DNA of 64,000 nucleotides from assembly GCA_044892525.1 (NCBI GenBank), contig CM097887.1, positions 43,214,001 through 43,278,000 on the forward strand, given 5' to 3'. The translations under genes and the position numbers were made by a program. Below are positions 5,472-63,920 of this stretch, piece by piece (within the stretch, counting starts at the first letter, position 1; each line of letters opens with the position of its first letter). Under the pieces are notes generated by a model. It was not told the origin of the DNA, did no database searches, and worked only from the letters and a program-made list of their open reading frames with translations. The DNA comes from Schmidtea polychroa. Taxonomy: Eukaryota.

Positions 5472-6170
5472 TTAATGTGATATGTAATATTCTGTAAATG
5501 TTGTCAGCCTTACTGGAATATAATTTGAATAAGCTTTCTTTTAGATGGCCCCTATAACAAATATCTGCAACTATCAAATTTGACGAAACTCTTTGTGTAA
5601 CCCAAAAAAAAAAATTTTTTTCTTAAAATAAGTGCGATTTGTGTAAGGATCAAGCGTTGACAGACAGTATTTCACCTGAGGTGCTTTCTTTTGTAGATTT
5701 TTTAAGAGATAGTAAATATTATCAGTAAAATCTTGTTGCTTAACTTTTTTGACTACAAACAAATTATTGATCCCTCGGGGCCCCACGTAATTATGGAATG
5801 TTTGTTAGTGTGTTTTGAGTGAAATGAATTGTAATAGAAATAACAAATATAGAATTGTTATAGACCAAATATCTATGTTTATTATAAATATTTGAATTTA
5901 TAAATTATTATCAACAAAACAGTTGCTAGTCATAAATAATTTAATACAATATTGACATTCAAGTCACTTTTTCGATAATACAATGGTGAGGGTCCCCTTG
6001 ATCATGGTCCCTTACTTGGTCTCGTGATATGCATACTTATATTTACTTCACTAATGGGAGTCTGTGACATAGTGAAATCTGATGAATTAAAATTTAATTA
6101 CAAATTTGTATCATATTATCATTTTTAGATTTCCAACTTTCTCTTCATTTTTTAGTTTTATTGTTTATAG

Positions 6171-7314
6171 AAAAACGAAATGGTCGACAAATATTAGTCA
6201 AAAGTACAACGAATGGAACTACATAACTTTTCCAGTCAATTTTAAGGTCTCAAATATTGATTTAAAGAGTGACCTGGAGTATTCTTCACTAGAAATAAGT
6301 GGACATTCGATTTGTGTCGATAATTTCACAGTTTCCAAATTTCCTTGTCGATTTACAAAAAACTTTTTCAATAACAATTTTTCATCCGATCAAAATATTT
6401 GGCTTACTCCACCTATAAGCCTTCTATTAGCGATTATCGCACTGATGGTCGCATTGGTGTTGATCGGTGTTTCTTTGAGTTTTATTTGTGCAAAAAGAGC
6501 TCAAAGGAATTTACAGCGGTGTAAACAAACATCTCGTCGTAACAAGACGATGAGAAATGATAGATTATCTCTTCAAAATTCAGTAAATATTGACGCAACA
6601 GTTAATAGTAATTACGACATTGACACATTCGGTTCCAGTGTTCGATTTCCTAATCAAAATCGCTGCTTACCGGCTGTTGTTCATGTTCGAAGTAATCCGC
6701 AGTTATTTTGCTATTCGCGACATCATTCGTTTCTCGCTTCAAAATCTGTCGAAAGCAACGAGACGAATCCGAATTGTCGATTTTCTCTTGCTCTGACTGA
6801 AGATGCTCAAGTTCAGTTGTTGACAAACAGCAATTTAACGAATGCGAGTCCGCCAGTGTCTAGTGATTTGTCATCCAGGAATTTGCCCATCATTCGACAG
6901 CAATCTTTCACCACTACAATTAGTCATGAAAGAACTCCATCTCCGACTGAACAGAATTCTCGAGCTGAAACCTCTATTCAACAACGACCTCAATCAATTG
7001 TTGTCGTGCCGAGTTTTTGTGCTCCAATAATTGATCAATCCGAGTCTGATCTGTCCTTGGAATCAGTTCATCTCCAGCAAATCCCTCTCGCTGGTAGCAG
7101 ACTCGATAGATCTCGTCCGATTCGCGAGTCCATGAATATTGGCTATGTCAGCGATAATAGTCCTTATGATTTGCCTCATTACGATGCAGCTTTGGAACTG
7201 TTAGCGGCACACAAAATGAAATTGGCTCAATCTATAATTTCTAATGACCAATCATCGGACGTTGCTAATAACAACAATTCCGATGATTTCGATCAGTTCG
7301 GTTCGATCGATTGA
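6171..7314 (+). CDS. Terminal coding exon(s) of a single-pass type I membrane protein; probable MAM-domain C-terminus, TM helix and long Ser-rich cytoplasmic tail
   Basis: Within ORF 6106..7314 (402 aa). Acceptor ttgtttatag at 6161-6170. KWSTNISQKYNEWNYITF...HSICVDNFTVSKFPC resembles the MAM C-terminal pattern W..G....W....IAIDDI....C. TM segment ISLLLAIIALMVALVLIGVSLSFIC is followed by KRAQR. LPHY (L/PPxY-like) motif near the C-terminus. The domain call is by eye. Confidence 0.7.
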
Positions 7315-12283: not shown

Positions 12284-12413
12284 CTGAATACAATTTTTAT
12301 CAAAAAATAATTGCAACTTCAGAAATTGATTATTCTGGATTTACTTTAAAGTAATTTTTATATCAAAATGTCAGATTAGTACTGAGTAATATTTCAATCA
12401 AATCTATTATTAA

Positions 12414-13024
12414 CCCCTTTACCGTCAACTTCCTTTTCTGAAATCGACCCTTAATTGGCGACTTTATTTGCGACTATAAAAAAATTAATCTTTTAATTAT
12501 TTTTCAAACATCCTTATCAACAATAACGAACAACTAATAACGAATAACAGTTAACTAATTAATAACAAATAAAGCAGTTTTTAGTATTGTTGTAAAGTAA
12601 TGAGTAGTGGATAACAAGGTACTGAATAAGAAGAACAATTGTTTTGCAAGTTTTTGTGTCTTTTGCTCCAACCTTTTGTAAGAATTTTTTTGTATGACCT
12701 GAAATAGACACTAGAAGAGCATAATAATAGTTGTTGTGATGATTTAGCTTATAGCGATGGGGTAATACAGCTACATTGAGGTTTGAAACGTTTTCTGAGA
12801 TTTCATGGGAAATGTTTTTTGTATAATTTCTTATTTTGTTTAGCCCTGCCATACATTCTTGCCCTCAGCAGGGCTAGAGTTGTAGTAGAGTGCATGGTTA
12901 TTATGGTTTGATGTTTCTAAATGACCTAGAACGACGTATTTATGTTTAGCCGAGTATATTCGGGTCTACCGGTTATCAGCCGGTTTCGGCTTGACGAGTA
13001 TCCTCGGGTCTACCGGTAAAGGGG
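12414..13024 (-). mobile_element. piggyBac-type non-autonomous element, family PB-a copy 2 (611 bp, inverted)
   Basis: TTAA flanks; TIR CCCCTTTACCG; reverse complement of 4861-5471 with very few differences. Confidence 0.95.
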
Positions 13025-13141
13025 TTAATTAGCTGGTCTACCCGGCGTTGCGCTTGCACATAAGTCGTATAAGAGATTGCTATATTTTATTAAATGCACT
13101 TGAATTTTCAAAATTAATTATATATCGTCAACATTTATTAA

Positions 13142-30278: not shown

Positions 30279-30503
30279 TTTTAATTTTTTATTTAGAAAT
30301 TGTATTATTCTTAATGACGATTTAAATATTTTTTTTTTAATTTAAAACAAATGCATACACAAAAAGACCAAATAAATGTTAATATTTTCATTTCAAATTA
30401 TATTATAAATTTCATTTCATGATTTAAAATACTAAAATTTTTTTTCCACCAAAAATTATGTTTTTAATTAAAAGAAATAATCAAACTTCGATTTCATTGT
30501 GAT

Positions 30504-33500
30504 TAGGGCTTGCAATACCGGATCAAATTTTCAAAACCGGTATTTCGGTATTTCATTATATTTATACCGGGATCCCGGTATTAATACCGGTATTTAAGAA
30601 AAAACAAAAAAAAGCAAAACTACACCGCAAAAAATAGAAAAAAAAATATTTATAAAGAAAATAAAATATTTAATTCAATAACGAATAATTCGAAACAATA
30701 AACTTTTTTTTAAAGTGCCACAAAAGACAAAAAAAATATAAAATAAAAAAAGAGTAATAATATAATTAATAATATATAAGAATAATAAGTCCTATGTCCT
30801 ATTGTTGTGATTTGCCTTTAAAATATGCCCTCAAAAATGTTAAACTATCAAGAGTTTTGTCGAATTTTTGTGCACAGCAGCCCTGCTGCTGAAAAGGCTC
30901 TTTCGGACTCGACGCTAGTTGGTGGTATGGACATAAGGCAGTCATATACTAGTTGAAGATATTTTCCTCTAATATGTTCTACTTCGAAGTATGCTAGTTC
31001 CTGTTTTATAACTTTATAAAGTACTTTAGAATTCATCGTTTTTGAAATTCCACTTGCAGTATTCATCACATTAACTTTCTTGGAAATTGCCATTTCTAGT
31101 TTTTCTTTCATTGTCATCGAACTTAGAATTTCTGGCTCAGAATCAGCAGATAACTCAGAAACGTCGATGGAAGAGGCTCCTATGTTTTCAATATCGATGA
31201 CATCGATAGTATATAAGCGTTCCAATAAATTTATAATTATTTTTATAATTGTTGCGTTGTTAATTCGATTAAAAATTTCATTTTGGTCGTCATCTGCTGA
31301 TTCAGTAGGATTGTGCAGGTATTGTAGTAGACTCGATAAATCAGTACACCTTTGTTTTATAATTAGCTCTTCTTTGAATTCATTACTTAAAGCAGTATTC
31401 TGTTCTGTCAATTGATTAAACATAAATAGTAAAGCTGCATCTGCGCTAAGAAGAGTAGCATCTTGACGACAACAAGCTTCAACAGTTAATTTGATTGGAA
31501 GAAGAACTGAAATAACTGATGAAATAACTAAAGAAAAATCAATTTCCGAAAATGATATTTCGGCATTTAAATTTAAATCAATCAAAGCCTTTTGTATGCA
31601 GTTCTTTAACTGGACAAAGCGTTCTAGCATGGCAAGTAAGCTATTCCAACGTGTTTTAGAATCTAGAATTAAATTCAGTTCCTTTCCAAATTGTTCTTTA
31701 ACATGTTTCTGTAAAGCTTTATCATTTTTCATTGGCGAACGTCTGAATAGCTTCACAACTTTTCTTATTTTTTTAATCAATGGACCTATCTGTTCATGAA
31801 TAATTAAACAGTCAATTGCATTGTTTTCTTGAAGTATGGATAAACTATTATCATCAAGATCACTATCATTTTCATCACTTGTATGCTGGTTATCATCTTC
31901 GTTACAATTAGAATGTTCATTTTCTAAATTTTGGTGTATCATATTTATATATAAAACCTTAATGACAGCCAATTGAATTCCGTGAACTAAGCAAAGTTGT
32001 TTCCTTGCACAAATCAACTTTCCAACTTTGGTCATGACAGATGCACCATCGGTTGTAATGCACACAATGTGTTTATTTAAAGAAACTTGGAATAATTTAA
32101 GCCTTTCTTCAACGAGGGCAACACACTTTTCTGCAGGCAATGATCCTTGCACACGAACTAATCCTAAGTTCCAGAATTTCTTGATGCCAGCATGAACATT
32201 TATATTTAAATAACGTGGGTTTTTTACCGATGTCCATTCATCAAATGTAAGACTAAATCGTTGTCCCGAAAGAATTTGAGATTCTAACTCTTTAATCATA
32301 TTTGCACGAATTTTTTCACTGTACTGCACAACTAAAATTTTTATAGAGTTTATAGATTTTGGTATATTTTCATACCCTCTGGCAGTTAAACCTTTTCTGA
32401 TATCCACGGAAGTGCAAAATATGTTAAACGACAAACCGTCACATGTCGTCATACGAGCTAAAACTGCAGACAAAGAATTGTTCGTTTCCGAAACGAAAAA
32501 TGTTGTTATTTTCCCGCTAGAAACTTTGTTCACTTTAGAAGTTGATGGTTCTGGCTCAATTTCAATCAGAAGGTTGGAGATCGGAGCATTCCTTTTTTTT
32601 AAATTAATTTGGTGGAGAGTCTTTAGGTGGGTATGCAAACCACTTGTACTACCTCCTTGCGTCTTTATTACTTTGTTACACTTCTTACATTTTGAAATTT
32701 GTCCCTTTTTCTCACGAAGAAAATAGAACCATACGGAATTTTCATCAGCTGATTTTTCCTCAAAAACATAGTTTTCCATGGCTAAAAAAACAGCGTTTTA
32801 ACTTTAAGTAAATTACAGAATTTTTTGAATATTTGTACCCACTTATTAAAACGGCAGAAATCTTGCTATTCTTTATTATTATTTATTATTTTTAATTTTT
32901 AAAAAACCCGCAGCAGTGCGCTATGATAGCGCCGCTATCTATATAAATATATAGAAAATAAAAATTTTACTTATACAATAATTAATTTTCACACTTTTAA
33001 CTTACCTTTACCTATCTGCTATTTATCAATTGAATTAATGATTATTAATTATAATTATGATTTTAAATATTTTTTAACTTTTATATTATACAAACACAAT
33101 TCTCTAAATTTTCAAAAACTTTACAACTGAACTAACTAACTATTCTTTATAAAATAAAAAACATAGCTTCAATATTGAAAATTTGGAAAAATAGAAAACA
33201 ATAATTTCCCATAGAAACGGCTTGCTATGTTGTGTCTTTTTTAGTATTTTTTTAGTATTAGAAAAATTAACGTACAAAAAGGCTCTTTCTTAATGTAAAA
33301 AAAACAAATTACTTCAGTAGGGCCACCTGTACGTAAATTTCAAAATTAGATTTAATCTTTAAATATGACAACACCTAAACATATGCTAATTACTTATAAA
33401 AAATAAAATAGTTAAATAAAAATGATATGAATGTTAACTTACAGCAAAAAAATTTAATACCGGATACCGGTATTAAGTGGTCATTAATACCGGTATTGAA

Positions 33501-33549
33501 CGGTATTAAAAATGTCGGTAATACCGGGATCCCGGTATTGCAAGCCCTA
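30504..33549 (-). mobile_element. Near-intact hAT DNA transposon (3046 bp, Ac/hobo-type TAGGG ends)
   Basis: TIR TAGGGCTTGCAATACCGG; perfect 8-bp TSD ATTGTGAT; ATACCGGTAT subterminal repeats; 643-aa transposase ORF. Confidence 0.97.
30848..32779 (-). CDS. hAT transposase with N-terminal BED zinc finger (C-terminus frameshifted)
   Basis: BED finger VW.YF...CKKC...G.STSGLHTHLKTLH; catalytic LTFDEWT, ITTDGASVM, CLVH, TRWNS, PTSVESERAFS. The expected tail KTLDSLTFLRAYF is in another frame (30799-30860). Confidence 0.95.
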   Translation of the reverse strand: MENYVFEEKSADENSVWFYFLREKKGQISKCKKCNKVIKTQGGSTSGLHTHLKTLHQINLKKRNAPISNLLIEIEPEPSTSKVNKVSSGKITTFFVSETNNSLSAVLARMTTCDGLSFNIFCTSVDIRKGLTARGYENIPKSINSIKILVVQYSEKIRANMIKELESQILSGQRFSLTFDEWTSVKNPRYLNINVHAGIKKFWNLGLVRVQGSLPAEKCVALVEERLKLFQVSLNKHIVCITTDGASVMTKVGKLICARKQLCLVHGIQLAVIKVLYINMIHQNLENEHSNCNEDDNQHTSDENDSDLDDNSLSILQENNAIDCLIIHEQIGPLIKKIRKVVKLFRRSPMKNDKALQKHVKEQFGKELNLILDSKTRWNSLLAMLERFVQLKNCIQKALIDLNLNAEISFSEIDFSLVISSVISVLLPIKLTVEACCRQDATLLSADAALLFMFNQLTEQNTALSNEFKEELIIKQRCTDLSSLLQYLHNPTESADDDQNEIFNRINNATIIKIIINLLERLYTIDVIDIENIGASSIDVSELSADSEPEILSSMTMKEKLEMAISKKVNVMNTASGISKTMNSKVLYKVIKQELAYFEVEHIRGKYLQLVYDCLMSIPPTSVESERAFSAAGLLCTKIRQNS

Positions 33550-36221
33550 ATTGTGATGGCTGCTGCCCCATCTTTGCTTTGGAAACAAACATTCTTGATA
33601 GGCAATTAATTAAGCAAGCAGTCAAAATAAGATTTATATACAATTTACAATCAGATTACTCGACAATTTTTGAAACTGGAATATTACGTGTTTAAAATAA
33701 TAGAAAAACAAGAGAAAACTGTTGGGCTAGAATTGATTTCTAAACTCCATGTTAGGAAGGGGACAAAAAGTGTCAGTACACAACACGCATACCCAGCATT
33801 AAGTTTACTTGAATGAAAATATATAAAAACACCAAATAAGCAATGATAATAAAGAGATAATATACCCAAAAATAAAACATCTTAATTAAAAATATCACAA
33901 TTAAGAAGTATCACACAAAAACTTAGTCAAATATAACCGAAATACAATAAAACAACAAAAACAAATTCGAATAAAGTCGATTAGTAAAAATTAAAAAGAA
34001 AAATTTAAAAAAATCTCCATAATATCTTTTGGAAGGAAAATTAGATCAAAATTTTCAATAAAAATCCAGAACAATCCATAATTCATCATGGCCGCTAAAC
34101 GACCCAAAAAAATTTATAAAAAAATAAAAGTTTTAGTTTAAAATATAAAAATTTTTAAAAAAAATTCACAAAAAACAAGTTTAAACTAAGAAATAGATTA
34201 AATTTAGCATGGAATGTTCTGGAAATGCTGAAATCTATCATGGAAGAAAATTTTAATAAAAATAATTCAAAAATAAAAACAAAAATTCTTACGGAAAAAT
34301 CACCATCAAAATCGATTAAAATTAAAAATCGAATGTTCTAGAATTAAAATAATTCGAATTTGTTTTACTGCATCAATGCACGCATGCATACTTGCACATA
34401 AAAAAAAGGGTATATAAAATAACACATTTCGTCATTGATCTTGATTTTTCTGAGATTGTAAGTAAGGATTTTTTAATAATATATGATTTATTATGGTTAT
34501 ATATGATTCTTCTTTTTTAATTTTTATCTTCAAATCTTTATCAATGATTTAGAGATATTGACTGAGATCCTCGTTGTTGACAATTTCAACACGAGATCCC
34601 AACAAATCCAGCTTCTATGCTAGTGTATGAGGTTCATAACCTGCAAATGCAAAAATTGAAATGATTTACGAACCCGGAGTGGCGGTTGACTGCACTAAGT
34701 ATACGGTGTAGTGTATCGCTTGAAAATACTTCGTGGTGACCAACTTAGTTTGGTGATAAATATGTTTCAAATTAATTTATTTGGGGTTACAGCGGGCTTT
34801 TTGGTTCGGCTGTAGCTGTATTGTTTACATAACAATAGGGCTTATCGTAGTGAGCACAGTGTGGCCACGAAAATAAGCAAATTTTTATTAATTGACCATT
34901 TTCTCGCAAGTAAATGATACACCTAAACTAACATTAACAATTTTGTGAACTACACACCACTAAGAATATATAAACGGGAAATATCCCAGACTCAATTATG
35001 ACACAGTGCCAAGCAAAGTAGCCTATTAATCTCTAATCTGAAATTGTAAATTTTGCTATTTATCTAATCACTACTCATTCATGCTAGCGACTCTTGCCAC
35101 TAAAATGGTTTTGTGTTATTATAATACACTATTATTGTCTAAATATGATCTAATCTTGAAGAATATTTTGAATAGGACCTTTTTTTCATTAAAATCTCTT
35201 TATGCTATCGTAATTCACCATTGATAACTCTTATCCAAATATGACTTATTCGTTTCCATAAAATACCTTACATTTCTATAGTTCACTGTCGACAAATGTT
35301 AGATTCTATAAAACACTTTGACATCGCCATAATTCATCATTGATATAGTTTAGTATTTAATAATTTTCATAAAATGTTCTTATATTATCATAAGGTATCA
35401 TTTATATATCTTTTTGCTTATGAATATCCTAAAATGCTTACATGTTGCCATAATATACTACTGATACCTTGATACATTCTATTACGTATAATTTTCATAA
35501 AATACCGTATTTTAGCGGTAATTTCCACTACAGATATTTCATCCTGACTACTAACTTAAGTGCTTCTATGGGATTTTAAAATGATGTGCACTCCTAGTCT
35601 CAAAGTTTTTTAATACTGAAATGCACAATTTTTTTTCAAAACAACAATTCTTTCAAATGTTTAAGCCACAAGTTAATTGATTCTAATTTACTTTGGATTT
35701 AGCGTTAAAGTTCATTTTCCTACTTTTTTTGGTTTGTAATTTTGTTGGAATATATTAATTGATGTTCCCTATTGAAAACTACGTTCTACTAACAGTTTCC
35801 TTTTCTTCCATTACACAACAATCCAGGTAGAACCACGCAAACTCAATTTCCTAAAATAATCTTGTACACGCGTATCTTTCCAGAAATATTAACCGTGTCA
35901 GTGGTCAGTTGAATTGTTAACGCAACTCAAAATATGGCATTTCCCAAGTTAATATAAGAAATTAATCATTTAAAAATGACATAACTAAGCCAGACAAAAA
36001 AATTGTATTCCGATTATAGCCAAATACAAAATTATTAAAGCCCAAGAGTTAATCTGTAAAATTTTATATTTTAAATCTTCTCCCATGCTGTAGAACTTCC
36101 AATAGTCTTTAAAAGGACAGGAAAATTGTCAAAAATATAATTTTGAAATTAAACCTATCAAAAGGCAATATGAAACAACTTAAATCATCATTTATGTTTG
36201 TAATCAACTTGAATAACTTAA

Positions 36222-36438
36222 CCCTTTAGATGCCGCGAGATTTTAGTACGGTCGTGCACTACAGGCCGGAAATTTTCGGGCAAAACTAAAATTGATTTTA
36301 TATTACATTATGTAAAATACTTGACCTCAGCTAGTTAAAAAATGCAAAGTATAGCGAGTTTGCACACTCATTTTGTATGAGCGGCATGGCGCGCACGGAA
36401 ATACAGAGCGTGTTAACACGCATATGGCATCTAAAGGG
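36222..36438. mobile_element. piggyBac-type MITE (217 bp)
   Basis: TTAA flanks; perfect 13-bp TIR CCCTTTAGATGCC. Confidence 0.92.
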
Positions 36439-36698
36439 TTAAATCATTTATTAATTATTTGCCAAAAAAATTTCATCACCAATCTTAAATTTACCATTAG
36501 CAGATGAAAAATGCAGAGATCAAAATACGAATGAAATAAATAAGATTAAGATTATATTTCATAAAATGATAATTTAAATTACATTTAACACGATACCAAT
36601 AAACAATAAATACAAAATTTCATGAATGCAGCTTGTGTAACACAACTGGATCGAAATTTTCTAGAACAAGAACAACTGCATACGAACAACTTATTATT

Positions 36699-37160: not shown

Positions 37161-38627
37161 TAATTCAATTTGCAAAAATATGACAATTGTGTTGAGTATA
37201 AAGACTATTGACATTAATATAATCCAGTACAAGAAATAAGTTATTATTTGTTTTAATCTTGTAACATTGTTTCGACTGCCTTGAACGAATGTCAAAATTG
37301 AAAACAGAAATTTCAAAGAATATCAAGTGATTCTAATTGGTTATTCCATGCAAAAAAGTTATTTAAAAAAAAATCCGATTGATAAAATTTCACAATAAAT
37401 ATTGGAGAGATAAGAGAAAGTATATGATCATCGATAATATTGAAAATTACTGTCTCAGCGGAAAGGTTTAAAAAGTACAGAATAACTATAAATTTAAAAC
37501 AAGGTTGTTTTTGTGTATAGTAAATAAAATTTATATCATCTGGAATTCATTGATGTGAGCTAAAACACGATCTATAATGGTCAATTTATGTTATGTTATA
37601 ATTATTATTCGACACTTGAAACATTTCAAATTTTATTTTTTTTATAATTTTAATCGATAATGTTAAGAATAAGATACAAAATTAATTAATACACAAAATC
37701 TGCCGTTGAATAATTTAGTTAACCAACAAGACGAATATAGTAATAATACTTTCATTAATATTAACCAATAATCTCATATATCAGAGTTTAACAATTTCAT
37801 ATAAATTATTATTAAAAAAAATTATTTATCATAACAATTTTCAATATTCTTTCTTTATTCTTTCGTATTATGCGAATAAACATGACTAATAATCAAAAAA
37901 TCCTTATTAAACAAGAATACAGATTTGCAAATTTGAGCATATATATGTTGAGCCTGATGTCACAATCTTAGAGTGCGAGTTTTAACATGTCAGTACAGTG
38001 AGTTAATTATTTTCTACATGTTTTAATCTAATATTTAACTATTCGTATGATAACTATTCGCTGAAATTTATAGAGAAGCTATTGAGCATAAGTAATGACA
38101 TTAAAAAATTAAAAGGTTAAACATGATAAAAATCATTTAATTTTTTGTTCACCTTGGATCTGTTTTAATTTTCTTTATTAAGACTGTAGATCAATTTGTT
38201 CGGTATTGACCTTTTAAGACATTTTATAAAAAAAATGGCTTAAAAAGGCAATGATGGAAAATTGAAATTGTTTCTACACATAAAATGACAAAAAGGGAGT
38301 TAACAACGAAATCATTTAAACAAATATTAACGTAAATAATAAATCAGAGATTTTTATGAAAAATAAATGTAATGTATCGATAAAGTTATAAATTATCCGA
38401 ACAAGTCGAAATGTCTAAAATAGAATTTAAAAACACTTGAATATATTTTTTTAAATATACTTTTTTAATTACCAACACCATATTTTATTTGATTTATTGT
38501 CAGATATCTATCCATTAATTATGAAAATTACTTGATACCTACATAAATGTTTTCCACCTGATATATCAACAGGCTTATAAATTCCTTATTTTGCTTATTT
38601 TTGGCAAACAACAAAAAATCACTTTAA

Positions 38628-39508
38628 CCTTCCTAAGACCAGGTGGGATAATAGCATCATATTTTTTTGAAAATTTCTGCTAAATCTAGAACCTACCGCA
38701 ATCAACCACTAGTTATTCCCAAGGTGATCATTTATAGGACATCGACACCAACGCGAAAGATCGATCAAAATAACAAAAAAACGTGTTTTTAACAATTAAA
38801 ATGAAACATAAAAATTTATGTAAAAAAGTAAGTATTAAAAAATAACAAATATCTAACATTGACAAGATATCCATTTTCGTTTTCCATTGCTACAATCTCG
38901 TTATCTCCATTTCTCACGAGACGATGAATATTAATACAGATGTATTAATATCCATAAACAAAGAAAACATCAACAATTAATATTAAAATACAAATTTATG
39001 TGACTATGTTTAACTGGATCTATCCGGAATCGACGGGGAAATGACAATCGGCTATGCCCTAATCATTTAATAGTACTTTGCATCAATTTATCACAAAAAA
39101 GAATCTTGTTCGCATTTATTGCAAAGAATCTGCACGCGGTACAAATTTACACAAAGTTGGTTATTCACGCCATAATATAAACCGCATCATTTGCGCATAC
39201 TCGTGAATAAGATCACAAATGTCGAAAATTATGTAATAAATGTTCAGAATTTGTGTGTATAGAACATTCCACTAGCATTATAATATGTAAAACTTGTGAT
39301 AAGAAATGTGTTACTATATATAAGAAATATTAATTTTGTAAACACTTGTTTCTGTATTATGTTTGTATTTTATAGAATATATTTTCTTTTTATACATTAA
39401 AATTATTAAAAACCTTTAAACTAGCAATAGCACAGTGAAAAAGTATTGGGGTACAAATTTACCTCAAGTGGTCTCCCATGTAAGAAATTTGAACCGGTCT
39501 TAGGAAGG
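38628..39508 (+). mobile_element. piggyBac internal-deletion derivative (881 bp)
   Basis: TTAA flanks; TIR CCTTCCTAAGACC; C-terminal Cys-rich domain remnant DHKCRKLCNKCSEFVCIEHSTSIIICKTC at ~39210-39300. Confidence 0.92.
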
Positions 39509-39865
39509 TTAAAAAGTGAAATTTGTTTCGAAAATAGATTGTATTTCAAACAATGCCGAACCTTTCATTTATTATATAATTGCGACAATCATAAATAAGA
39601 ATTTCGTTTCCAATCACAAGAACAAGCTCTATAGTGTTGTTATTCATTTACAAAATCATACTAGATCCAATTCAATAGGAGGAGTGAAATCAAAAAAAGT
39701 TTCATTAGAGGAAATGATAAAGTATTCACTATTAATGTTGCATTTATGGAAATATTTCAATTATTAAATGAAGGAAATTAAATGACTTTATTAAAATTAC
39801 TTTTATTATAACAGCATATTTTTTATAGTTCTAAAAATATATAAGAAAGTTAATTTCAAAATTGA

Positions 39866-40031
39866 NNNNNNNNNNNNNNNNNNNNNNNNNNNNNNNNNNN
39901 NNNNNNNNNNNNNNNNNNNNNNNNNNNNNNNNNNNNNNNNNNNNNNNNNNNNNNNNNNNNNNNNNNNNNNNNNNNNNNNNNNNNNNNNNNNNNNNNNNNN
40001 NNNNNNNNNNNNNNNNNNNNNNNNNNNNNNN
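39866..40031. other. Assembly gap (166 N) inside gene B
   Basis: Run of N. Confidence 0.99.
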
Positions 40032-45214: not shown

Positions 45215-45980
45215 ATTTCCCAGAGAAAAGTAAATTTTTACCAATTAAAAGTAAATTTTTCCCAAATAAAAGTAAATTTTTCCCATTTAAAAGTAAATTT
45301 TTCACAATTAAAAGTAAATTTTAAATTGCAACCATAAATAACAAAAATTAATTTAAAATTTAAAAAAATATTGAAAATGTGTTTTAATATTATGTTCTGT
45401 TAAAATATGTTTACCGCCAAAATAGCATAGGAATAAAGTTTTTAAAACCATAATGGAAGAAGAAAATTTAACAGACAGACATGATTCATTTATCATTTTC
45501 TCTCACCATATTCCTACATGATTAATCCGATTGAATCCGCTTTTTCGAAAATAAAAATGTATTGTGCATGGAATGTTAAGTACAGAAAATGTTGGAAATC
45601 TATCTCAAATGATTACTAATGCATCAACACAAGTGACTTCTGATGATGCACCAGGATTTTTTAGGCTAATGTCTAGAAATATAACAAATGCAGCTGCAGG
45701 TTTGCCTTACCATCATGTGTAAATAAAATTTAATGCTTACTTATGAACCTTGTAATAATATTTGTTTAATTATATTTACTTGTTATAATAAATAATTTTT
45801 GTTTAAATTACTATACTTTTAAATGGGAAAAATTTACTTTTAAAAGGGAAAAATTTACTTTTAAATGGGAAAAATTTACTTTTAAAAGGGAAAAATTTAC
45901 TTTTAAATGGGAAAAATTTACTTTTAAATGAGAAAAATTTACTTTTAATTGGGAAAAATTTACTTTTCTCTGGGAAATGA
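45213..45980 (+). mobile_element. IS630/Tc1-type deletion derivative with long TIRs built of 21-bp tandem repeats
   Basis: Termini CCATTTCCCAGAG...CTCTGGGAAATGA in (TA)n; about 5 left and 7 right copies of AAAAGTAAATTTTTCCCATTT; internal SPYSYMINPIESAFSKIK motif (DDE_3 catalytic E region). Confidence 0.85.
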
Positions 45981-49967: not shown

Positions 49968-52055
49968 TATTGGTTGCATTCAAATATTGGTAAATACGTA
50001 TGCTCTATTCAATTTTATGAAATGGGTTTCAAAGATTTCGAATTAATTTTGAATTTTTAGTTATTTCAGTGTTGGTGTTTCAAGAATTTGTTGTTCAAGA
50101 TTCAGTTAGCAGACAAAATCAAATAGTGGCGTGGTTGTGTGAAGTCAGAATAAGCCTTCAAGAACGTCAAGGATGACTACTGCATCAACCGCATACATAC
50201 TCGTGCGGTCTGTGTATATTGTTACTACATGCAGGGACTGAGTACACTAGAAAAATGAGTCCTCTATTTCGAACTGCGCTGTTGGTGCATTCCTAAGGTT
50301 TTAGAACTTCCGATAGAAGTTCATACGTCATATGCGATGATTTGAAATATTAGTGTAAGAGTTACAGTTGATCGGGCTTCTTGGAACCGAAGGATGAGGA
50401 ATTAGCGCAGTTATTTGCAATGGCAAACAAAGCCTATACAAACAACAGAAGACGAACGAAGACGGAAAAATATAAAAATCTAACAGCACACTTATATACA
50501 CTTCTACACTAAATTCATAATGACAGTTTATCTAATTTGAAATCCGAAGCATTCAAGTTGAAGTAAAATATGGGACGCTATCCTGAAGGCTAGGGCACTA
50601 AAATGGAGTTGGCTTGGAGTTTAGCTAGCCATCGTGCCTTAGCTAGTAGTCGATGGGGACAGTTTTTGTTAGATGATTATTTTGCTGTTCCTTGGTAGCA
50701 TTTTATCAGACGTCGGGGTTATAAGCAGGGGTTTCATACTTTTCAGTAGAGGAGCAATCTGCTTGCACTTCTGATTTGACTCAGATATCATGCGATGGAT
50801 CGGGATGACTTCAAGTATGGTAGAGCCTTCGAGTAGGGGCAGATAATTCCATATATGTTCGACAGAGTAGCTGGTGCTGATTGTGAATAAAGTTTTATGG
50901 TGCATAATGTATTTTCCTTGGAGATCTAAAGTTAATTTCCCTTTAAATTTAATGTTGCAAATCCCTGTTTGTTGATTCCATATTTTACTTAACCCTAGAA
51001 TTTTATTTAGGAGATTAATACCAATAAATTAGAATTAATTTAATTTATTTTAGCCTTCTTTCATAATTTGTTAATTACGTTACGAAAAAAGCTTTCTGTT
51101 ATATTTTATGTTCGGATCGCTTAAACTGATTTTTTACTGGAACGATGATGATTTAATCCCCAAATTGATGGTTATGACATTTGTTATGAGATTTTCGATT
51201 TATTTCATTTAGATTTAGAATAATATTCTCGTTTATTAATAGTTCAGATATTTGTTTTCCCATTTTTTAGTTTCCTCGACCAGCAATAGATTTGAAAAAG
51301 CACTCAACAAAGGTAACGTGAATCTCTCAAACCTTCATGATACTTAATAGGCTATTAGTGTTAAATTCTATGAATAGACACTAATTATTGATCTGGTCTC
51401 GTTAGTTACTGATATCAGATATCTGTTGGCGGGAAAATAAGATATACGATTATCATGGTGTCAATTTGAGAAAAGTTTGATCCTATTTCTCGACGATATC
51501 GATCCAGGCTTTGGGCCTTCAAATCTTTTCGCTATCCTGACATCTTTAGTGCCTATTAGTCATCGAGACATTCTGATTTTTCGATATTATATTAAATCTG
51601 CGCGATTCATTAATTTATTCTAGACCCGAATCAGAACACCTGCCACACTCATGACACACCTATTCCGGAGGCTATCCTGAATCAACGCCCGCTGCCTACC
51701 ACTTCGGGTAGTATAAATCTGCTACTAAGGCCTCAGGTGTAATCTCGTCCATGCTTGCACTTCCCTGATTTCGAACATGAAATCTAATTGACCATTTAGG
51801 TGTTAATCAGTGAACTTATCTGTCAGACCAGAGTGTGATAGGGCTTGTTCCACTCTACTATCATCCGGCAGGACACCTCTTGATTTGTCTATCTTTACAC
51901 TAGTTTTGACCTGTTAAGGTAACCCTCAAAGTAAGCATATGCTGGTCACCAAATTAGTATGCTGAAATGTTTGGGCTGTCTCGAAAAATGCATATCGAAA
52001 TCATATAACAATATAAATGAAATAAGCTACTATGTTACATTAAAGGTTTTATTAA

Positions 52056-52295
52056 CCCTCTCCGTGTAAAAAATAATGCTGATATTTATAGTGACCCGTT
52101 CTATTCCCACAAAAACAGTTACAAAATGTGCCTTCAGCTTCATCCCGATGGATTCAAAGCTGGAAAAGGGACACATCTTTCTGTTTTCTTTTTCATAATG
52201 CGCGGTGAAAACGATGTACTTTTGCAATGGCCTATGAAACTTGAAGTGACATCTTGCTTTAATGTCGAATATATTCGACAAATATACGGAGAGGG
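52056..52295. mobile_element. piggyBac-type TTAA element (240 bp) carrying a host TRAF fragment
   Basis: TTAA-CCCTCTCCGT...ACGGAGAGGG-TTAA (14-bp perfect inversion including TTAA). Confidence 0.9.
52081..52260 (+). pseudogene. TRAF-family MATH/TRAF-C domain coding fragment
   Basis: Open frame DIYSDPFYSHKNSYKMCLQLHPDGFKAGKGTHLSVFFFIMRGENDVLLQWPMKLEVTSCF matches the TRAF signature S.PFY....YKMC....P.G...GKGTHLS.F...M.G..D.LL.WP....VT. Not in the supplied ORF track. Confidence 0.9.
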
Positions 52296-52788
52296 TTAAT
52301 ATAAAAATGAAACTTTACAATTATAAAATGGGAACAATGACATAATTATTCATATACTGATTGCATAATATAATATTAAAAAAAATTAACAATCAGTAAT
52401 TACCGTTAAGTTGTCAAACAAAAATAATGAACAGTTTCAGTAGAATCGAAAAAGGTTCAATTTCAAAATATAAGTGTTTTCAGTTCGTTCCATCTGTCAA
52501 ATCGAGGCCTTAATAAATTGACAGTAAGTTACTGCCACCAATATTTTTAGCCGAGAGTTTTCTAATCGCCATCTTCCTTTTCGGCATTTTCTATGTCTTT
52601 CTAATTATTTTGGCGTTTTGCGATGCTATTTAAAAATGTTTCATGTGCTACTGGTTGTCGTTTCTTTATTTCAGGTAGTTCTGTTTTATTTTTAATTATT
52701 TTTTAATTAAATTTTCTTGTTTGGTTGATGCTGATTACTTTTAATTTAGTAACATTTTGGGTTTTATGCTATGTAGGTCTGATTTCGG

Positions 52789-53212
52789 CAGTGCTCGAAG
52801 TGGAACAAAATATGTGCCGGGATAGGCATGCTGTGGCACCCGGGATTCCAGGCTTTTATGCAGAAATTTTCAGTTGGGGGTGTTGCAAAACTTTGGGGGG
52901 TGTCCAACAAATTTTTTGGGGGGGGTGTCCACCCATTTAATCATAAATTTCAGAATATACCTACCTATCCATTACTGCTGCTTGGGAAATTCTTAATTGA
53001 ATAGAGAATAGAGAATAAAGAATATATATATATATATATATATATGGATGTACTATGTGTGACCTTAATTGCAGTATTTGTGTGCCTATAAAATGAAATA
53101 AGTACCGGGATAAACCTATAGATTATATGAAATGAAGTGCCGGGATGCAATTCCGCCTACATAATCAATGCCGGGATAATATCCCGGCTATCCCGCCTCA
53201 CTTCGAGCACTG
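52789..53212. mobile_element. hAT MITE (424 bp)
   Basis: TIR CAGTGCTCGAAGTG; perfect TSD GATTTCGG; CCGGGAT subterminal repeats. Confidence 0.93.
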
Positions 53213-53520
53213 GATTTCGGGAACCTCTTCATTATATTTCCAGGTCACTTACTCTTTTTTTATTTAACAACTCAACGCTTAGAACAACATCAGTGAAATC
53301 AGCTGTTTTATCTATTTATTTAAGAATATAAAAATTAAATTCAGTCAATTTTTTAATAAATACTATGTCAATTGAAAGGAAATCAGAGTTGTGTTGTGCC
53401 TAATAAAAATGTTACCTTATAAAAATACCAAAATAATAATTATTTTTTAAAATATGTATAAAAATAAATCAAAAAATAAAAAGTACTACATTAAAACATT
53501 AATATTCTCCTATAAATCCT

Positions 53521-55269
53521 TTAATTCAAATTATTATTATTTTCTCCACTTCGTCTTAAACTTGGAAGACTGAGTCCATGTATGGTAGTGCTGCTTCTCG
53601 ATATGTTGGCCATTTTTATCATATAATTATATCTAAACTCTCCTAATTGATGAATTTCTTCGCTGGAGAGGTTAGAAATTTCGGGGGTATAATCATTTAT
53701 TAATAAATTAGAATTGGGATTTAGACCAGAATAACCTAAAAACAAACTGACAGGAGCGTCATTAATAGCTCCATGAAATTTAATGTTATATTCATAAATC
53801 ATTCTTTTTAAGATTATAACCCAACATTCCGTATCTCTTTCTTACATAACAGACAAAAGCATTCTTTTTTGAGTAAAGTTAAAACGCTCAACTTGAACCT
53901 GTGATTCAGGGTGATTTGGGGCTCCGAATATTTGTCTAACGTTAAAGCTATTACAAAAAAATGAAATAACTCTGTTTTTGAATTCAGAACCATTATCTGT
54001 GTGTATTTCATTCGGGATAAATCCAGACAAAAATAAATCTTCTAAATGTATAAAGACTTCCAAAGCGGTCTTTGAAGCACAAGGATAAGCCAATGCGAAC
54101 TTAGTAGCACAATCTATCACCGTTAACCCCTTTACCGTCAACTTTCTTTTCTGAAATCGACCCTTAATTGGCGACTTTATTTGCGACTATAAAAAAATAA
54201 TCTATTAATTATTTTTCAAACATCTTTATCAACATTAACGAACAACTAATAACGAATAACCATTAACTAATTAATAACAAATAAAGCAGTTTTTAGTATT
54301 GTTGTAAAGTAATGAGTAGTGGATAACAAGGTACTGAATAAGAAGAACAATTGTTTTGCAAGTTTTTGTATCTTTTGCTCCAACCTTTTGTAAGAATTTT
54401 TTTGTATGACCTGAAATAGACACTAGAAGAGCATAATAATAGTTGTTGTGATGATTTAGCTTATAGCGATGGGGTAATACAGCCTGATTGAGGTTTGAAA
54501 CGTTTTCTGAGATTTCATGGGAAATGTTTTTTGTATAATTTTTTATTTTGTTTAGCCCTGCCATACATTCTTGCCCTCAGCAGGGCTAGAGTTGTAGTAG
54601 AGTGCATGTTATTATGGTTTGATGTTTCTAAATGACCTAGAACGACGTATTCACGTTTAGCCGAGGATACTCGGGTCTACCGTGCTGCAGTACGCTTTCA
54701 AATATATAAAGCGAGTTAACTCGGGTCTACCGGTTATCAGCCGGTTTCGGCTTGACGAGTATCCCCGGGTCTACCGGTAAAGGGGTTAAAATGTACTTAA
54801 ATCCGTCGTTTTGGGTTTCGAAATTCAACATGTAAGTTATGTCCATCTGAAAACGATCCATTTTATTTATTATTATAATTGGTGTAATGGATGATGAGGT
54901 AGTTTCTACTGTTCTTCTGGAACAGATACAACATATATCAAGCACAAGTTTTACGTCTTCTTACTTAATATTATAATATCTGCATTGTAATTCTTTATAA
55001 ATAGCCTCTAGACACCTATGCGAAGCTAAATGGACCTCTTCAACGCATAACATTTTCTTTGGATCATTGTAATCTTTAATATATTCTAACAAAATATTAT
55101 TTTCCATTTGAATAAAAATTATGTTATTTAATATCTTCATTCTAGTTGCTTTTTTAAAAAATAAATTTCGTTGTGATTTTGTATCGAAATCAGGTAAATT
55201 TCCGTTAACCATAAAATTTACATAAGAGTTGTATTCTGCTTCCGTATTTATTTGAATTCTTGCAGGCAT
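53521..55269 (-). pseudogene. Integrase-like transposase (HHCC zinc finger + D,D35E), ~361 aa, disrupted by two in-frame stops and a piggyBac MITE
   Basis: ORFs 54961..55269, 54727..54945, 53842..54141 and 53521..53802 join in one frame once the MITE and one TTAA are removed: HLASH...CCIC; RFQMDIT; KYIL|TVIDCATKF; HTDNGSEF-(35)-VERFN; YN..FH.AI...P..LFLG. Confidence 0.9.
54127..54785 (-). mobile_element. piggyBac-type non-autonomous element, family PB-a copy 3 (659 bp)
   Basis: TTAA flanks; TIR CCCCTTTACCG; extra ~50 bp between TCGGGTCTACC direct repeats. Confidence 0.95.
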
Positions 55270-55491
55270 TAGAATTATAAAAAATATATTATATCTTTAA
55301 AATCAATTTATAATTTATATTAAAAAATTATAATTATTTTGGTATTTTTATTAGGCAACATTTTTATTAGGCACCACTAAAGAAATCAGAGTTGAAAATT
55401 AAAAAAAGTTCTTATAGTATGAAAATTAAAAGAATTTAACTACATTCAAAAAGAGTATATTTTGTTTGAAGAACGACATAATAAAAATATA

Positions 55492-60812: not shown

Positions 60813-62024
60813 CTATAATCTTTTTCTAATAAATATTTTAATTAATATTAAAATATATTATAATTTAATTATCCATTGCTAAGAAATTTCTCATCTTGCT
60901 AAGTTTCATCGGCTGTTTTACATTATTTTATTGAGTTTTTGGAAATTTTTTTAAAAAATTATTTAATATTTATTATTAAAAATAATTATTTTACTTAATT
61001 TCTTAATTGCATTCTAAATTGGTAATTCTCGCTCATAAACGCAATCTCAAATTACGGTTCAAATGTACAAATCTGTTATTATTATTATTGGGACAAAATC
61101 CTGATGGAACGATTTAATAGTTAGTTCAGACCCGGCCACAGATATAAGCGCTCTAAGCAGCGTGTCACAACCGATATCAGATTCACGGGAAGTTCATAAA
61201 TAATCCCATTGTAATATGATTTCAATTCTCGCTGACTTTCTTTTACCCTGATACATATGGTTTTACACCGTTTGTACGAATATACAATGCTTCACTTTCA
61301 ATAGGGATGCTACCCATTACCCACGCCATCTATTAATAATGACAATATTGTTATGTGTATGCTATTTTTATGCGACAATTACGTGACATTATTGTAAATT
61401 TGTCATCCATGGTACTCATACCGTATGTATGATCAAATCCTAAATCCATAATATTGTTAGGAGAATATTGTTTACCATATAATAACGGAGACCCTAAATA
61501 CATGTAGTTCCTAGATCATGGTCTAAAAGGCCTACTAGTTAATCCGGCACTGATCGAAACCATCATATCATGTAATCAACACATAGATTTTAAGGGTGAC
61601 CCAACAAAACAGTCGAAGACAGATTCGCCCCAACAAATTATTTTCTTAAAATCAATATTCACAATGCCTGCTGCTTTGTTCGACTTTCTCATCCAAATTC
61701 ACTAATCAAAATTTTGATGGGCTGTTTTCTTTTAGCTTATTTATCGGTTCTTATTTAATTGAGGTGTTTTATCAGGATTGTTTATTCTTGGACAATTTTG
61801 TCGGGTGTAGTCTTCAGAAACCACTGGCCTGGGCAATAAAATTACAAATAAAAGATAAAAACTTTCTAGTTTTTCTAATTTTGTTATATAGCTTAAATTT
61901 AAACGTAAAAAAGAAAAATTTTGAATACGTAATATTATTCAAGAGAAACATAGATATTAATAAAAGAAAGTGCAAGATATTTATAAATATTTGTGGAAAA
62001 TTGAATATCAAAAAATAAAGTTTT

Positions 62025-63920
62025 TTTTTGTTGCGTGTTTCTAATTTTACTAACACATCTTCTACGTCAAATTTCCTCCTTGTTTGTTCTTCTTGTTCTT
62101 CCTTTACCTGTTTTTCTTTTGACCCGTACCATTTCTCCCTACTAATCTTTTTTCCAAAAACTATCTCTGCCGGGCTTATTCCGGTCGTTTTTTGTTTGGT
62201 TGCATTTAATGTAAATTCGACTTCTGGTAGTATCTCTGCCCAATCCGTCTTCCTTCTGTCTCGTAAAGTAGCATTTATCAGCTCTCGTATTGTCCTGAAT
62301 TGCCTTTCTATCTGTCCATTTGTTTGGTGATGGTATGGACTCGAAAAACATAACTTAATATCAAGTTTTCTTGTGAATTCTCTCAACATTCCTGATTCCA
62401 ACGCCTTCCCACAATCAACTCTTATCTCTTTTGGGCACCCATATCTTAAAATCCATTTTTCTAAAATCCTTTTCTTTATTGTTTCTTCGTCTTGCCTTGT
62501 TATAGCTGCCAGGACTTGATACTTACTATACTGGTCTATTATACCCAATATATACTTCTTACGTCGTTTTGTTTCTTGCATTGGCCCACATATATCCACG
62601 AATATAATTTCGAACATTTCGGTTGATTCTAGTTTTTTTTACTGGTTCCTTCGTTGTAATTGTTATAGCCTTGGTTTTTTGACAAGTCTCACAACTTCGA
62701 ATACTTTCCTGAATCTGACTCCACAGGTTTTTCCCAATATATCTATCTTTCATATAATCAGCTATCTTCTCGACTCCAGCATGACATAATAGCCTTTATG
62801 GTTTCTTGTATCTCGTTTTCAGGTATCATCGTTTTCTTTCGTAATTTTTCTTCCAAATTTATTCGTTGATTAGTGCTTCGACCTTCTCTGATCGAGTCTA
62901 GTAATCTAGATTTTATCTTTCCTTTCTTAGCTTTTTTGTGAGCCATTTGACATTGAACACACGTTTCACATTTAGTTCTGGACACCATGTCTGCATTTTG
63001 GTGATTAACACCTTTTCTATATTCAACTATTATATCCAAACTGCTCAAATAATTGATCCAGGTTTGGAATTGTGAAGTAATTGGCTTCTTGGTTGTCATC
63101 ATAGAAGTGATCGCCTTGTGGTCTGTCCTTAGCGTGAATCTTCTTCCGTAGAGATAGTGCTTAAAATAAATACAAAAATAGTATACCGCCAATAGTTCCT
63201 TCCTTGTAATGCAATATCATTTTTCATGGTTCGTCATCGAGTGTGATCCATAAGCAATTACTCTCTCCTTTCCATCTTTATCTCTTTGCGAAAGCACTGC
63301 TCCAATGGTATCAAAACTGGCATCAGTATCTAAAATGAACTCCTTTCTCAGATCCGGAGAGCATAGTGTTGGTGCCGTTGTGAGTGCTAACTTCATTCCC
63401 TCGAATACGTTATTCGTTCCTTCAGTCCATTCCAGTTTTTTGTTACTCAGACCGCTACATAATTGTTCTAACATCCTTGCTTTCATTGCATACTCACTGA
63501 TGAATCTTCTATAATAATTGCAAATTCCTAGAAAGCTTCGAAGTTTCTTTATGCAATTTGGCTTACCAAAGTTTTGCATAGCCTGAATCTTAGAAGAATC
63601 GGTTTTTACTCCTTCTTTACTGATTATGTGTCCTAAGAATCTGATTTCTTTCTTTATTATTTGACACTTTTCTGGGTTAATCTTTAGTCCTGCTTCATCG
63701 ATCGCTTTTAATACTACACTGAGTATTGTATGATGTTTTTCTTTACTATTCGAATAAATCAGAATGTCATCCACATAGACCATTGCCTATTACCTTTGTC
63801 ATCATTTCCTGGAACGTACCTGGTGCTGCAGCAATTCCGAACGGCATGAAACAGTATTGCCCTTTCTTTGTTGAGAATGCTGTTTTCTCTTGCGATTCTT
63901 CGTCTAACTGCACTAACTAT
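62025..63920 (-). mobile_element. Decayed Ty3/Gypsy pol (RT-RNaseH-integrase)
   Basis: KTAFST..GQY..MPFG; VYVDDILIYS; LDTDASFDTIGAVLSQ; RTDHKA; H...H...CETC; FVDICGP...VDCGK...NGQIERQFR. The domain order RT-RH-IN indicates Gypsy. Stops and frameshifts present; no LTR recognised. Confidence 0.95.

What the first reader, a model, noticed from the sequence alone, without database searches (positions are those of the whole stretch)
52052..52299. piggyBac-type element composed almost entirely of a captured TRAF MATH-domain fragment
Seen: TTAA-CCCTCTCCGT and ACGGAGAGGG-TTAA enclose 240 bp. About 180 bp of this is an uninterrupted frame encoding the most conserved TRAF-C/MATH strands (YKMC, GKGTHLS, WP). 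It has no stops and no flanking TRAF exons, and sits in an otherwise TE-filled region. Established: gene-fragment capture is well known for Pack-MULE, CACTA and Helitron elements and, to my recollection, much less for piggyBac. TRAF family expansion has been reported in planarians. Inference: this is a 'Pack-piggyBac' that mobilises TRAF coding DNA. It could seed TRAF expansion or produce TRAF-directed small RNAs.
Basis: partly seen in the sequence, partly recalled or inferred. Interest (0 to 1): 0.75.

Follow-up and report, generated by a model that had tools for sequence, protein, structure and literature searches.

The report
TRAF gene fragment inside piggyBac-type ends
A 240-base mobile-element shell of the piggyBac type (TTAA duplication plus matching inverted ends) really does enclose a 175-base piece cut from the middle of a TRAF gene's last exon. 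Only this one copy can be seen, so it is an uncommon passenger-carrying mini-transposon rather than a shown driver of TRAF gene expansion.

Summary
TTAA (52052-52055 and 52296-52299) flanks 13-nt inverted ends, 10 of them perfect and starting CCCT. Between the ends, 52077-52254 encodes the N-terminal 46% of a TRAF MATH domain (Pfam E 1.6e-18). The whole element is open in that frame.

The ends are not chance. The window holds six TTAA + CC-start inverted-end structures; 300 simulated windows held none. One other family has two copies differing at 1 of 619 bases at different TTAA sites.

The MATH piece is 93% identical in protein to P0152, an unnamed coiled-coil+MATH protein. It is 75% identical in DNA to a related gene (L001) with RING, TRAF zinc finger, coiled coil and MATH. 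There it matches only the middle of a 615-base terminal exon, with sharp edges. No other TRAF sequence lies in the 64 kb. So it is a gene fragment, not a local exon.

Best reading: a non-autonomous piggyBac-superfamily element carrying a host gene fragment.

Not shown: a second copy, a matching transposase-bearing partner, the donor gene, expression or small RNAs. This genome is not in any collection I could reach. Seeding new TRAF genes is unlikely from less than half a domain.

The parts
52052..52055 (.). left TTAA (target-site duplication)
52056..52068 (+). left terminal inverted repeat, 13 nt (first 10 perfect, starts CCCT)
52069..52076 (+). 8-nt A-rich spacer with no similarity to TRAF genes
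   Evidence: in-register comparison with L001
52077..52254 (+). TRAF MATH-coding fragment: Pfam profile positions 3-60 of 125; 54/58 residues identical to P0152; 75% DNA identity to L001 1232-1405. No stop or frameshift. Two changes at sites invariant in 7 relatives.
52255..52282 (+). right subterminal stretch with no TRAF similarity; holds an 18-nt perfect palindrome at 52263-52280
52283..52295 (-). right terminal inverted repeat, 13 nt
52296..52299 (.). right TTAA (target-site duplication); its TAA closes the open frame
52021..52299 (+). open frame of 92 codons running through the left flank, the whole element and into the right TTAA. The part outside the MATH match is short enough to be open by chance.

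Best explanation
This is a miniature, non-autonomous DNA transposon of the piggyBac superfamily whose interior is a passenger: a 175-178-base piece from the middle of the terminal exon of a TRAF-family gene (RING, TRAF zinc finger, coiled coil, MATH).

Shown:
- Two 13-nt inverted ends starting CCCT and a duplicated TTAA.
- An interior of 21 non-TRAF bases on the left, the TRAF piece, and about 41 non-TRAF bases on the right.
- No transposase and no further TRAF sequence nearby.
- Other piggyBac-type mini-elements in the same window, one family with near-identical copies at different TTAA sites.

Inferred:
- A transposase supplied by an autonomous piggyBac-like element elsewhere recognised the ends and inserted the unit at this TTAA.
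- The TRAF piece replaced the interior of an older mini-element through a DNA-level copying or repair event, either before this insertion (then it travelled) or at this site (then it did not).
- The piece is inert as protein: under half a MATH domain, no upstream domains, and two changes at otherwise invariant residues.
For: - Anatomy.
- Significance of the ends: 6 observed, 0 in 300 simulations; expected 0.37.
- Fit to the published definition of piggyBac ends: TTAA duplication, 12-19-nt repeats, CC[C/T]T motif (PMC2872659; PMC5381638). CCCTC is listed as a recurrent motif (PMC10813416).
- Recent piggyBac-type activity in this genome: family A copies 4857-5475 and 12410-13028 differ at 1 of 619 bases and have different flanks.
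- TRAF identity.
- Donor-type gene architecture: L001 has a RING + zf-TRAF ORF, a 46-nt GT..AG intron and a 615-nt terminal exon holding the whole MATH domain.
- Sharp homology edges inside that exon.
- No other TRAF sequence in the window.
- MATH is encoded without interruption in genomic contigs of more distant relatives, L002 and L003.
Against: - Only one copy, and no second CCCTCTCCG end, is seen in 64 kb.
- No autonomous partner was found. None of the 13 catalogued S. mediterranea piggyBac types starts CCCTC, though only 5-nt motifs are listed and mini-elements were excluded there.
- The donor gene of the same genome was not found.
- piggyBac excision is normally precise, so the usual gap-repair route to gene capture is not the obvious one (general knowledge; precise excision is noted in PMC2872659).
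- The non-TRAF terminal stretches are very short (21 and about 41 bases). From my recollection of piggyBac end requirements, this is near the lower limit for efficient movement.
Confidence: 0.7

Rival explanations
1. Same shell, different donor. The MATH piece was copied from a MATH gene carried by a transposable element, not from a host TRAF gene. In planarians the giant Burro/GYPSM1-type gypsy-like retroelements carry such a gene inside ORF1 or as an upstream accessory ORF.
For: PMC6431247 reports that Burro elements are present in thousands of copies in S. mediterranea. They encode RING-like (AIR1), Smc and MATH_TRAF_C motifs. In a Dugesia/Girardia tigrina relative the MATH domain sits in a separate upstream ORF. 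Abundant donors make capture more likely. L001 is only 2 kb long, so its wider context is unknown.
Against: The closest relatives (P0152, P0037, P0153) are each single-member clusters seen on one contig. That is not what a thousand-copy element would give. L001 has two short GT..AG introns and a canonical RING, zf-TRAF, coiled-coil, MATH order. No multi-thousand-residue polyprotein with a single MATH match is among the best 150 of 3283 hits.
Confidence: 0.12
2. A decayed remnant of a TRAF pseudogene that happens to be bracketed by a chance inverted repeat with TTAA. There is no transposon.
For: TTAA is common in 29% G+C DNA. Only one copy is seen. About 3 TTAACCC sites per window are expected by chance, and 3 unpaired ones exist.
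Against: 300 simulations gave no TTAA + CC-start 10-nt inverted pair. The five other such pairs in the window behave as real elements. TRAF similarity drops from 9-13 of 15 bases to background within a few bases of each end region. No further TRAF remains lie within 52 kb upstream or 11.7 kb downstream.
Confidence: 0.05
3. The open frame is a working exon: an exonised fragment, or a short MATH-like peptide gene transcribed on the + strand.
For: 92 codons are open with no stop or frameshift in the MATH part. MATH-domain transcripts are many and well expressed in S. mediterranea (PMC6109357).
Against: It covers only profile positions 3-60 of 125. An invariant Gly and an invariant Ile are changed. 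The homology edges are not exon edges in relatives. No partner exons lie in the window. No protein of 43-138 residues in 5.8 billion shares words with it, though this genome seems absent from that collection. About 21 extra codons staying open is expected roughly one time in five at this base composition (my estimate frequencies).
Confidence: 0.05
4. Assembly artefact: a chimeric join placed TRAF sequence between two ends of a mini-element.
For: The region is repeat-dense, and an assembly gap lies 12 kb upstream.
Against: Both junctions are clean, the two ends and both TTAAs are intact, and nothing in the sequence marks a join. I could not test read support.
Confidence: 0.03

Closest known systems
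piggyBac-superfamily miniature inverted-repeat elements (for example coral CMITEs, PMC2872659)
   Same: TTAA duplication, short inverted ends with the CC[C/T]T motif, 100-250-base size, no transposase. The interior is unrelated to the autonomous element.
   Different: The origin of the CMITE interior is unknown; its authors only speculated about copying of host DNA. Here the interior is identifiable as a TRAF exon fragment. CMITEs are multi-copy; only one copy is seen here.
Pack-MULE / Pack-TYPE elements of plants (PMC8903248; reviewed in PMC13317346)
   Same: A non-autonomous DNA transposon shell whose interior is a fragment of a host gene, not a transposase.
   Different: Different superfamily (Mutator, CACTA and others, with 9-bp or 3-bp duplications and long ends) and a different kingdom. 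Pack elements are usually 1-2 kb, often hold several gene pieces with introns, and are amplified. This one is 240 bases, holds one piece from inside one exon, and its copy number is unknown.
Autonomous piggyBac families of planarians (PMC10813416, Table S2)
   Same: TTAA duplication and 12-18-nt ends. The end motifs of the other mini-elements in this window (CCCCT, CCCTT, CCTTC) all occur among the 13 S. mediterranea types.
   Different: No listed S. mediterranea type starts CCCTC. This element has no transposase, and no partner was found.
MATH_TRAF_C-bearing Burro/GYPSM1 giant retroelements of planarians (PMC6431247)
   Same: A mobile element of planarians that carries TRAF-like MATH coding sequence.
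   Different: Burro is a retroelement of more than 30 kb with a complete domain inside a polyprotein. This is a 240-base cut-and-paste shell with under half a domain. No gag/pol lies next to it.

Membership tests
piggyBac-superfamily non-autonomous element | TTAA target-site duplication directly flanking both ends | tested here: met
   52052-52055 and 52296-52299
piggyBac-superfamily non-autonomous element | Terminal inverted repeats of about 12-19 nt beginning CC[C/T]T (PMC2872659, PMC5381638) | tested here: met
   13 nt, 12/13 matching, first 10 perfect, starts CCCT. 0 of 300 simulations give such a pair.
piggyBac-superfamily non-autonomous element | Small size, no transposase coding capacity | tested here: met
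   240 bases; the only protein similarity is MATH
piggyBac-superfamily non-autonomous element | Several copies with the same ends at different TTAA sites | not testable with these tools
   One copy in the window. The end-pair pattern is absent from the metagenome, viral and prokaryote collections. This genome is not on record.
piggyBac-superfamily non-autonomous element | A transposase-bearing partner with matching ends in the same genome | tested here: inconclusive
   None in the window. The published S. mediterranea list has no CCCTC-start type, but gives only 5-nt motifs, and the species of the window is not proven.
Pack-type (gene-fragment-carrying) DNA transposon | Interior derived from a non-transposase host gene | tested here: met
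   52077-52254: 93% protein identity to P0152 and 75% DNA identity to the TRAF gene in L001. A TE-borne MATH donor is not fully excluded.
Pack-type (gene-fragment-carrying) DNA transposon | Parent gene present elsewhere in the same genome, with the fragment's edges as breakpoints rather than gene ends | tested here: inconclusive
   The edges fall inside the terminal exon of the nearest relative with DNA. The parent in the same genome could not be reached.
Pack-type (gene-fragment-carrying) DNA transposon | Amplification or movement after capture | not testable with these tools
   Single copy visible; no other genome sequence of this species is available
Functional TRAF gene | Complete MATH/TRAF-C domain | tested here: not met
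   Only profile positions 3-60 of 125. Relatives match positions 2/3/4-125.
Functional TRAF gene | Upstream coiled coil, with or without RING and TRAF zinc fingers, in the same locus | tested here: not met
   tblastn of 13 relatives, including full-length ones, finds nothing else in 64 kb

The most novel reading that the evidence does not exclude
The element is one member of an amplified family of piggyBac-type shells that copy and scatter TRAF MATH-coding DNA through a planarian genome. It would be the first clear 'Pack-piggyBac'. Its copies would inflate MATH-domain counts and feed sense/antisense transcripts into the piRNA pathway that acts on TRAF genes.
Probability: 0.12. Interest if true: 0.7.

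Novelty: new variant of a known kind. Interest (0 to 1): 0.45.

Why it matters
Copying of host gene fragments by cut-and-paste transposons is well documented in plants (Mutator, CACTA and related) and for Helitrons. In the paper library I searched I found no documented case for the piggyBac superfamily; there was only a speculation for coral mini-elements. piggyBac normally excises precisely. A piggyBac-type shell with an identifiable exon fragment would therefore show that interior replacement can also happen in this superfamily, and would give a dated example once the donor is known. Both MATH/TRAF domains and piggyBac transposase domains are reported as expanded in Schmidtea mediterranea (PMC6109357), so fragments like this could contaminate domain counts. 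As it stands this is one small, probably inert copy.

Tried and rejected
Searches for other copies or relatives, all empty:
- Second copy in the window by blastn and tblastn: none.
- Word search with the 79-residue frame: no candidate.
- Exact look-ups of three window ORFs (57-aa frame, hAT transposase, family-A ORF): not on record. The genome is therefore absent from the collection, and the empty protein searches say nothing about copy number.
- End-pair pattern in the metagenome, viral and prokaryote collections: 0 hits each.
- Protein-guided metagenome scan: 0 confirmed.

Donor gene:
- DNA for the two closest proteins is unavailable: the P0037 file is too large and P0152 is not on record.
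- A second word search from P0152 found no closer donor.

Other checks:
- Paralogous empty site: the flanks are unique in the window.
- Rfam and tRNA scans of the window: nothing.
- Pfam on open stretches of the other mini-elements: nothing, so gene fragments are not a general feature of them.
- TTAACCCTAGAA at 50989 as the end of an enclosing element: no partner end found. The count of unpaired TTAACCC sites equals chance expectation, so I dropped it.
- Supplement of PMC5381638: not held.

Rejected readings:
- Local exon: no partner exons; the edges are internal to the relatives' exon.
- Long-hairpin small-RNA source: only a 16-bp terminal stem.

Slips, declared:
- I briefly read the stretch to the right of the MATH match in a second frame next to the first.
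- I wrote the two flanks of the element side by side.
None of these was saved, searched or used. All comparisons in this report rest on tool output or on motifs quoted in the cited papers.

Full report
**Observation**

- TTAA lies at 52052-52055 and 52296-52299.
- A 10-nt motif sits at 52056-52065, with its exact reverse complement at 52286-52295.
- 240 bases lie between the two TTAAs.
- The repeat finder extends the inverted pair to 22 nt at 91% when the TTAAs and two flanking bases are included.
- Within the element the ends are 13 nt with one mismatch.

The frame starting at 52057 has 79 codons without a stop. The open frame as a whole runs 52021-52299 and is closed by the TAA inside the right TTAA. 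Residues 9-65 match the Pfam TRAF/meprin MATH model at E 1.6e-18, above its curated cut-off, covering profile positions 3-60 of 125. They also match solved TRAF3, TRAF2, TRAF5 and TRAF1 chains at E 1e-14 to 2e-16.

**Is it more than chance?**

The exact 13-mer made of TTAA plus nine end bases occurs only at the two ends. With up to two mismatches, 0.37 matches were expected from shuffles and 3 were found.

I counted structures of the form TTAA + perfect 10-mer starting CC ... reverse complement + TTAA within 3 kb. The window has six. None appeared in 300 third-order Markov simulations of the window. The other five are clearly real mini-elements:
- Three copies of one family, at 4857-5475, 12410-13028 and 54123-54789. 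The first two differ at a single base of 619 and sit in unrelated flanks.
- A 225-base element at 36218-36442.
- An 889-base element at 38624-39512.

So this genome carries piggyBac-type non-autonomous elements, some of which moved very recently. The structure at 52052-52299 belongs to the same structural class.

**What the interior is**

The full-library protein search gave 3283 MATH-domain hits. The best single-domain hits are short coiled-coil + MATH proteins:
- P0152: 54 of 58 residues identical (93%).
- P0037: 84%.
- P0153: 81%.

None carries a name or an organism.

P0153 lies on a 2005-base Logan contig, L001. Its layout is:
- Upstream ORF 197-799, with RING and TRAF-type zinc-finger matches that lie below Pfam's curated cut-offs.
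- A coiled-coil piece at 833-973.
- A 46-nt stretch bounded by GT..AG, across which the P0152 alignment changes frame.
- A terminal exon at 1020-1634 that encodes the rest of the coiled coil and the whole MATH domain.

L001 is therefore unspliced DNA of a gene with the canonical TRAF order of domains.

The window matches L001 only at 1232-1405 (window 52077-52250, 75% identity, no gaps). In register, identity is 9-13 of 15 bases inside that span and at background outside it, on both sides. More distant relatives on long genomic contigs (L002, L003) also encode the MATH domain without interruption.

The piece is thus cut from the interior of an exon, and its edges are breakpoints, not splice sites. 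Thirteen TRAF relatives, including full-length ones, find nothing else in the 64 kb. That excludes a local TRAF gene, unless its other parts lie more than 11.7 kb downstream or beyond the window's start 52 kb upstream, which contradicts the uninterrupted exon of the relatives.

**State of the fragment**

There is no stop or frameshift in the 58 matched codons. There are two changes at positions invariant in all seven aligned relatives: a Gly-to-Ser change in the conserved GYK motif, and Ile to Leu. At one position the fragment keeps a His that is shared with more distant TRAFs but not with its three closest relatives. The donor was therefore probably a paralogue or an older state of that gene family, not P0152 itself.

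The roughly 21 codons outside the match staying open is unremarkable at this base composition. The fragment holds under half of the eight-stranded MATH fold and none of the upstream domains, so a working TRAF product is not expected.

**What the non-TRAF parts are**

- Left: the 13-nt end plus 8 A-rich bases.
- Right: about 28 bases containing an 18-nt perfect palindrome (52263-52280), then the 13-nt end.
- Neither matches anything else in the window.
- Folded as RNA, the element gives z = -6. This comes from the 16-bp terminal stem and small local hairpins, not from a long double-stranded arm.

**Surroundings**

- Downstream, 52789-53212 is a mini-element with 14-nt perfect inverted ends and an 8-base direct duplication of the flank, the hAT signature.
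- From about 53.5 to 55.3 kb on the minus strand lie fragmentary integrase-type remnants of an LTR retroelement. One of the family-A mini-elements lies among them.
- The 2 kb upstream has higher G+C (36%) and no annotation that I could obtain.
- The flanks of the element are unique in the window, so no paralogous empty site is available.

**Mechanism**

The best reading is a non-autonomous piggyBac-superfamily element with a passenger gene fragment.

Shown: the end and duplication signature, the identity and limits of the passenger, the absence of transposase, and the presence of recently moved elements of the same class nearby.

Inferred: insertion at this TTAA by a transposase supplied from elsewhere, and acquisition of the TRAF piece by a DNA-level copying or repair event that replaced the interior of an older mini-element. 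TRAF similarity stops inside the ends and nothing TRAF-like lies outside them. So the ends and the passenger most simply arrived together. Replacement in place cannot be excluded without other copies.

**Comparison with what is known**

Published definitions of piggyBac-type ends are met: TTAA duplication, 12-19-nt repeats and a CC[C/T]T motif (PMC2872659; PMC5381638). CCCTC is among the recurrent motifs (PMC10813416).

The catalogue of 13 Schmidtea mediterranea piggyBac types lists the start motifs CCCGC, CACTA, CCCTA, CCCTT, CCCCT, CCTTT and CCTTC. The other mini-elements of this window start CCCCT, CCCTT and CCTTC. That fits that species or a close relative, as does the 29% G+C, though the species is not proven. 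No listed type starts CCCTC, so the partner of this element is unknown.

TRAF/MATH and piggyBac transposase domains are both reported as expanded in S. mediterranea (PMC6109357).

For gene-fragment capture by piggyBac-type elements I found no documented case in the library, only a speculation for coral mini-elements whose interior has no known source.

One alternative for the donor comes from PMC6431247: the giant Burro retroelements of planarians carry MATH_TRAF_C. Three things speak against a Burro donor: the closest relatives each occur as a single copy, L001 has introns and the canonical TRAF domain order, and no polyprotein appears among the best hits. L001 is too short to settle it.

**What could not be done**

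This genome is not in any collection reachable here.
- Three exact look-ups of window ORFs failed.
- The end-pair pattern is absent from the metagenome, viral and prokaryote collections.
- The protein-guided metagenome scan confirmed nothing.

Copy number, the donor locus, presence/absence polymorphism, expression and small RNAs are therefore open. The assembly gap at 39866-40031 was left untouched.

I once read the stretch to the right of the MATH match in a second frame beside the first. I once set the two flanks of the element side by side. Nothing of this was saved, searched or used.

**Verdict**

The structure is a piggyBac-type shell around a TRAF exon fragment, a new variant of a known kind. 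Its mobilisation as a family, any role in TRAF expansion and any small-RNA output are not shown, and the expansion role is unlikely. Interest is moderate (0.45).

Noticed in passing
window 4857-5475, 12410-13028, 54123-54789: Three copies of one piggyBac-type mini-element family: TTAA-flanked, ends starting CCCCT, 619-667 bases. The first two differ at 1 of 619 bases in unrelated flanks, so movement was very recent. All three keep a 101-codon open stretch with no Pfam match. The third copy is 48 bases longer.
   Followed up: partly
window 36218-36442 and 38624-39512: Two further TTAA-flanked elements with perfect inverted ends of at least 12 nt, starting CCCTT (225 bases) and CCTTC (889 bases). 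These motifs are also listed for S. mediterranea piggyBac types.
   Followed up: partly
window 30504-33549: An apparently complete hAT transposon of 3046 bases. It has 18-nt perfect inverted ends, an 8-base direct duplication of the flank (30496-30503 / 33550-33557) and an uninterrupted 643-residue transposase ORF at 30848-32779 (-). The ORF has a BED zinc finger and a sub-cut-off match to the hAT dimerisation domain.
   Followed up: partly
window 52789-53212: A hAT-type mini-element 490 bases downstream of the finding. It has 14-nt perfect inverted ends, repeated GCCGGGAT-like subterminal motifs and an 8-base duplicated flank.
   Followed up: partly
window about 53500-55300 (-) and 61814-63783 (-): LTR-retroelement pol remnants. 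The first stretch has a fragmentary integrase core piece and holds one of the mini-elements above. At the window's end, reverse transcriptase, RNase H and integrase ORFs lie in separate frames. I did not count the breaks.
   Followed up: no
window 45226-45322 and 45814-45967: Two arrays of a 21-base tandem repeat, about 500 bases apart and in opposite orientation, next to a 73-base AT dinucleotide run. They produce many TTAA-flanked inverted pairs in the scan. Possibly the long inverted ends of another element.
   Followed up: no
window 50989-51010: TTAA followed by CCCTAGAA, the start motif type listed for PiggyBac-3 of S. mediterranea. It has no partner end in the window. The number of unpaired TTAACCC sites equals chance expectation.
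   Followed up: partly
window 6106-7314 (+): A 402-residue open frame, Ser/Asn-rich with one hydrophobic span and only a sub-threshold RAMP match. Possibly a host exon.
   Followed up: no
L001 (Logan SRR33002330), 197-1634: An unspliced TRAF gene of a related, unnamed organism with two very short GT..AG stretches (about 45 nt) between coding pieces. Gene callers split it into three ORFs, so protein collections hold only its MATH-bearing part, P0153.
   Followed up: partly
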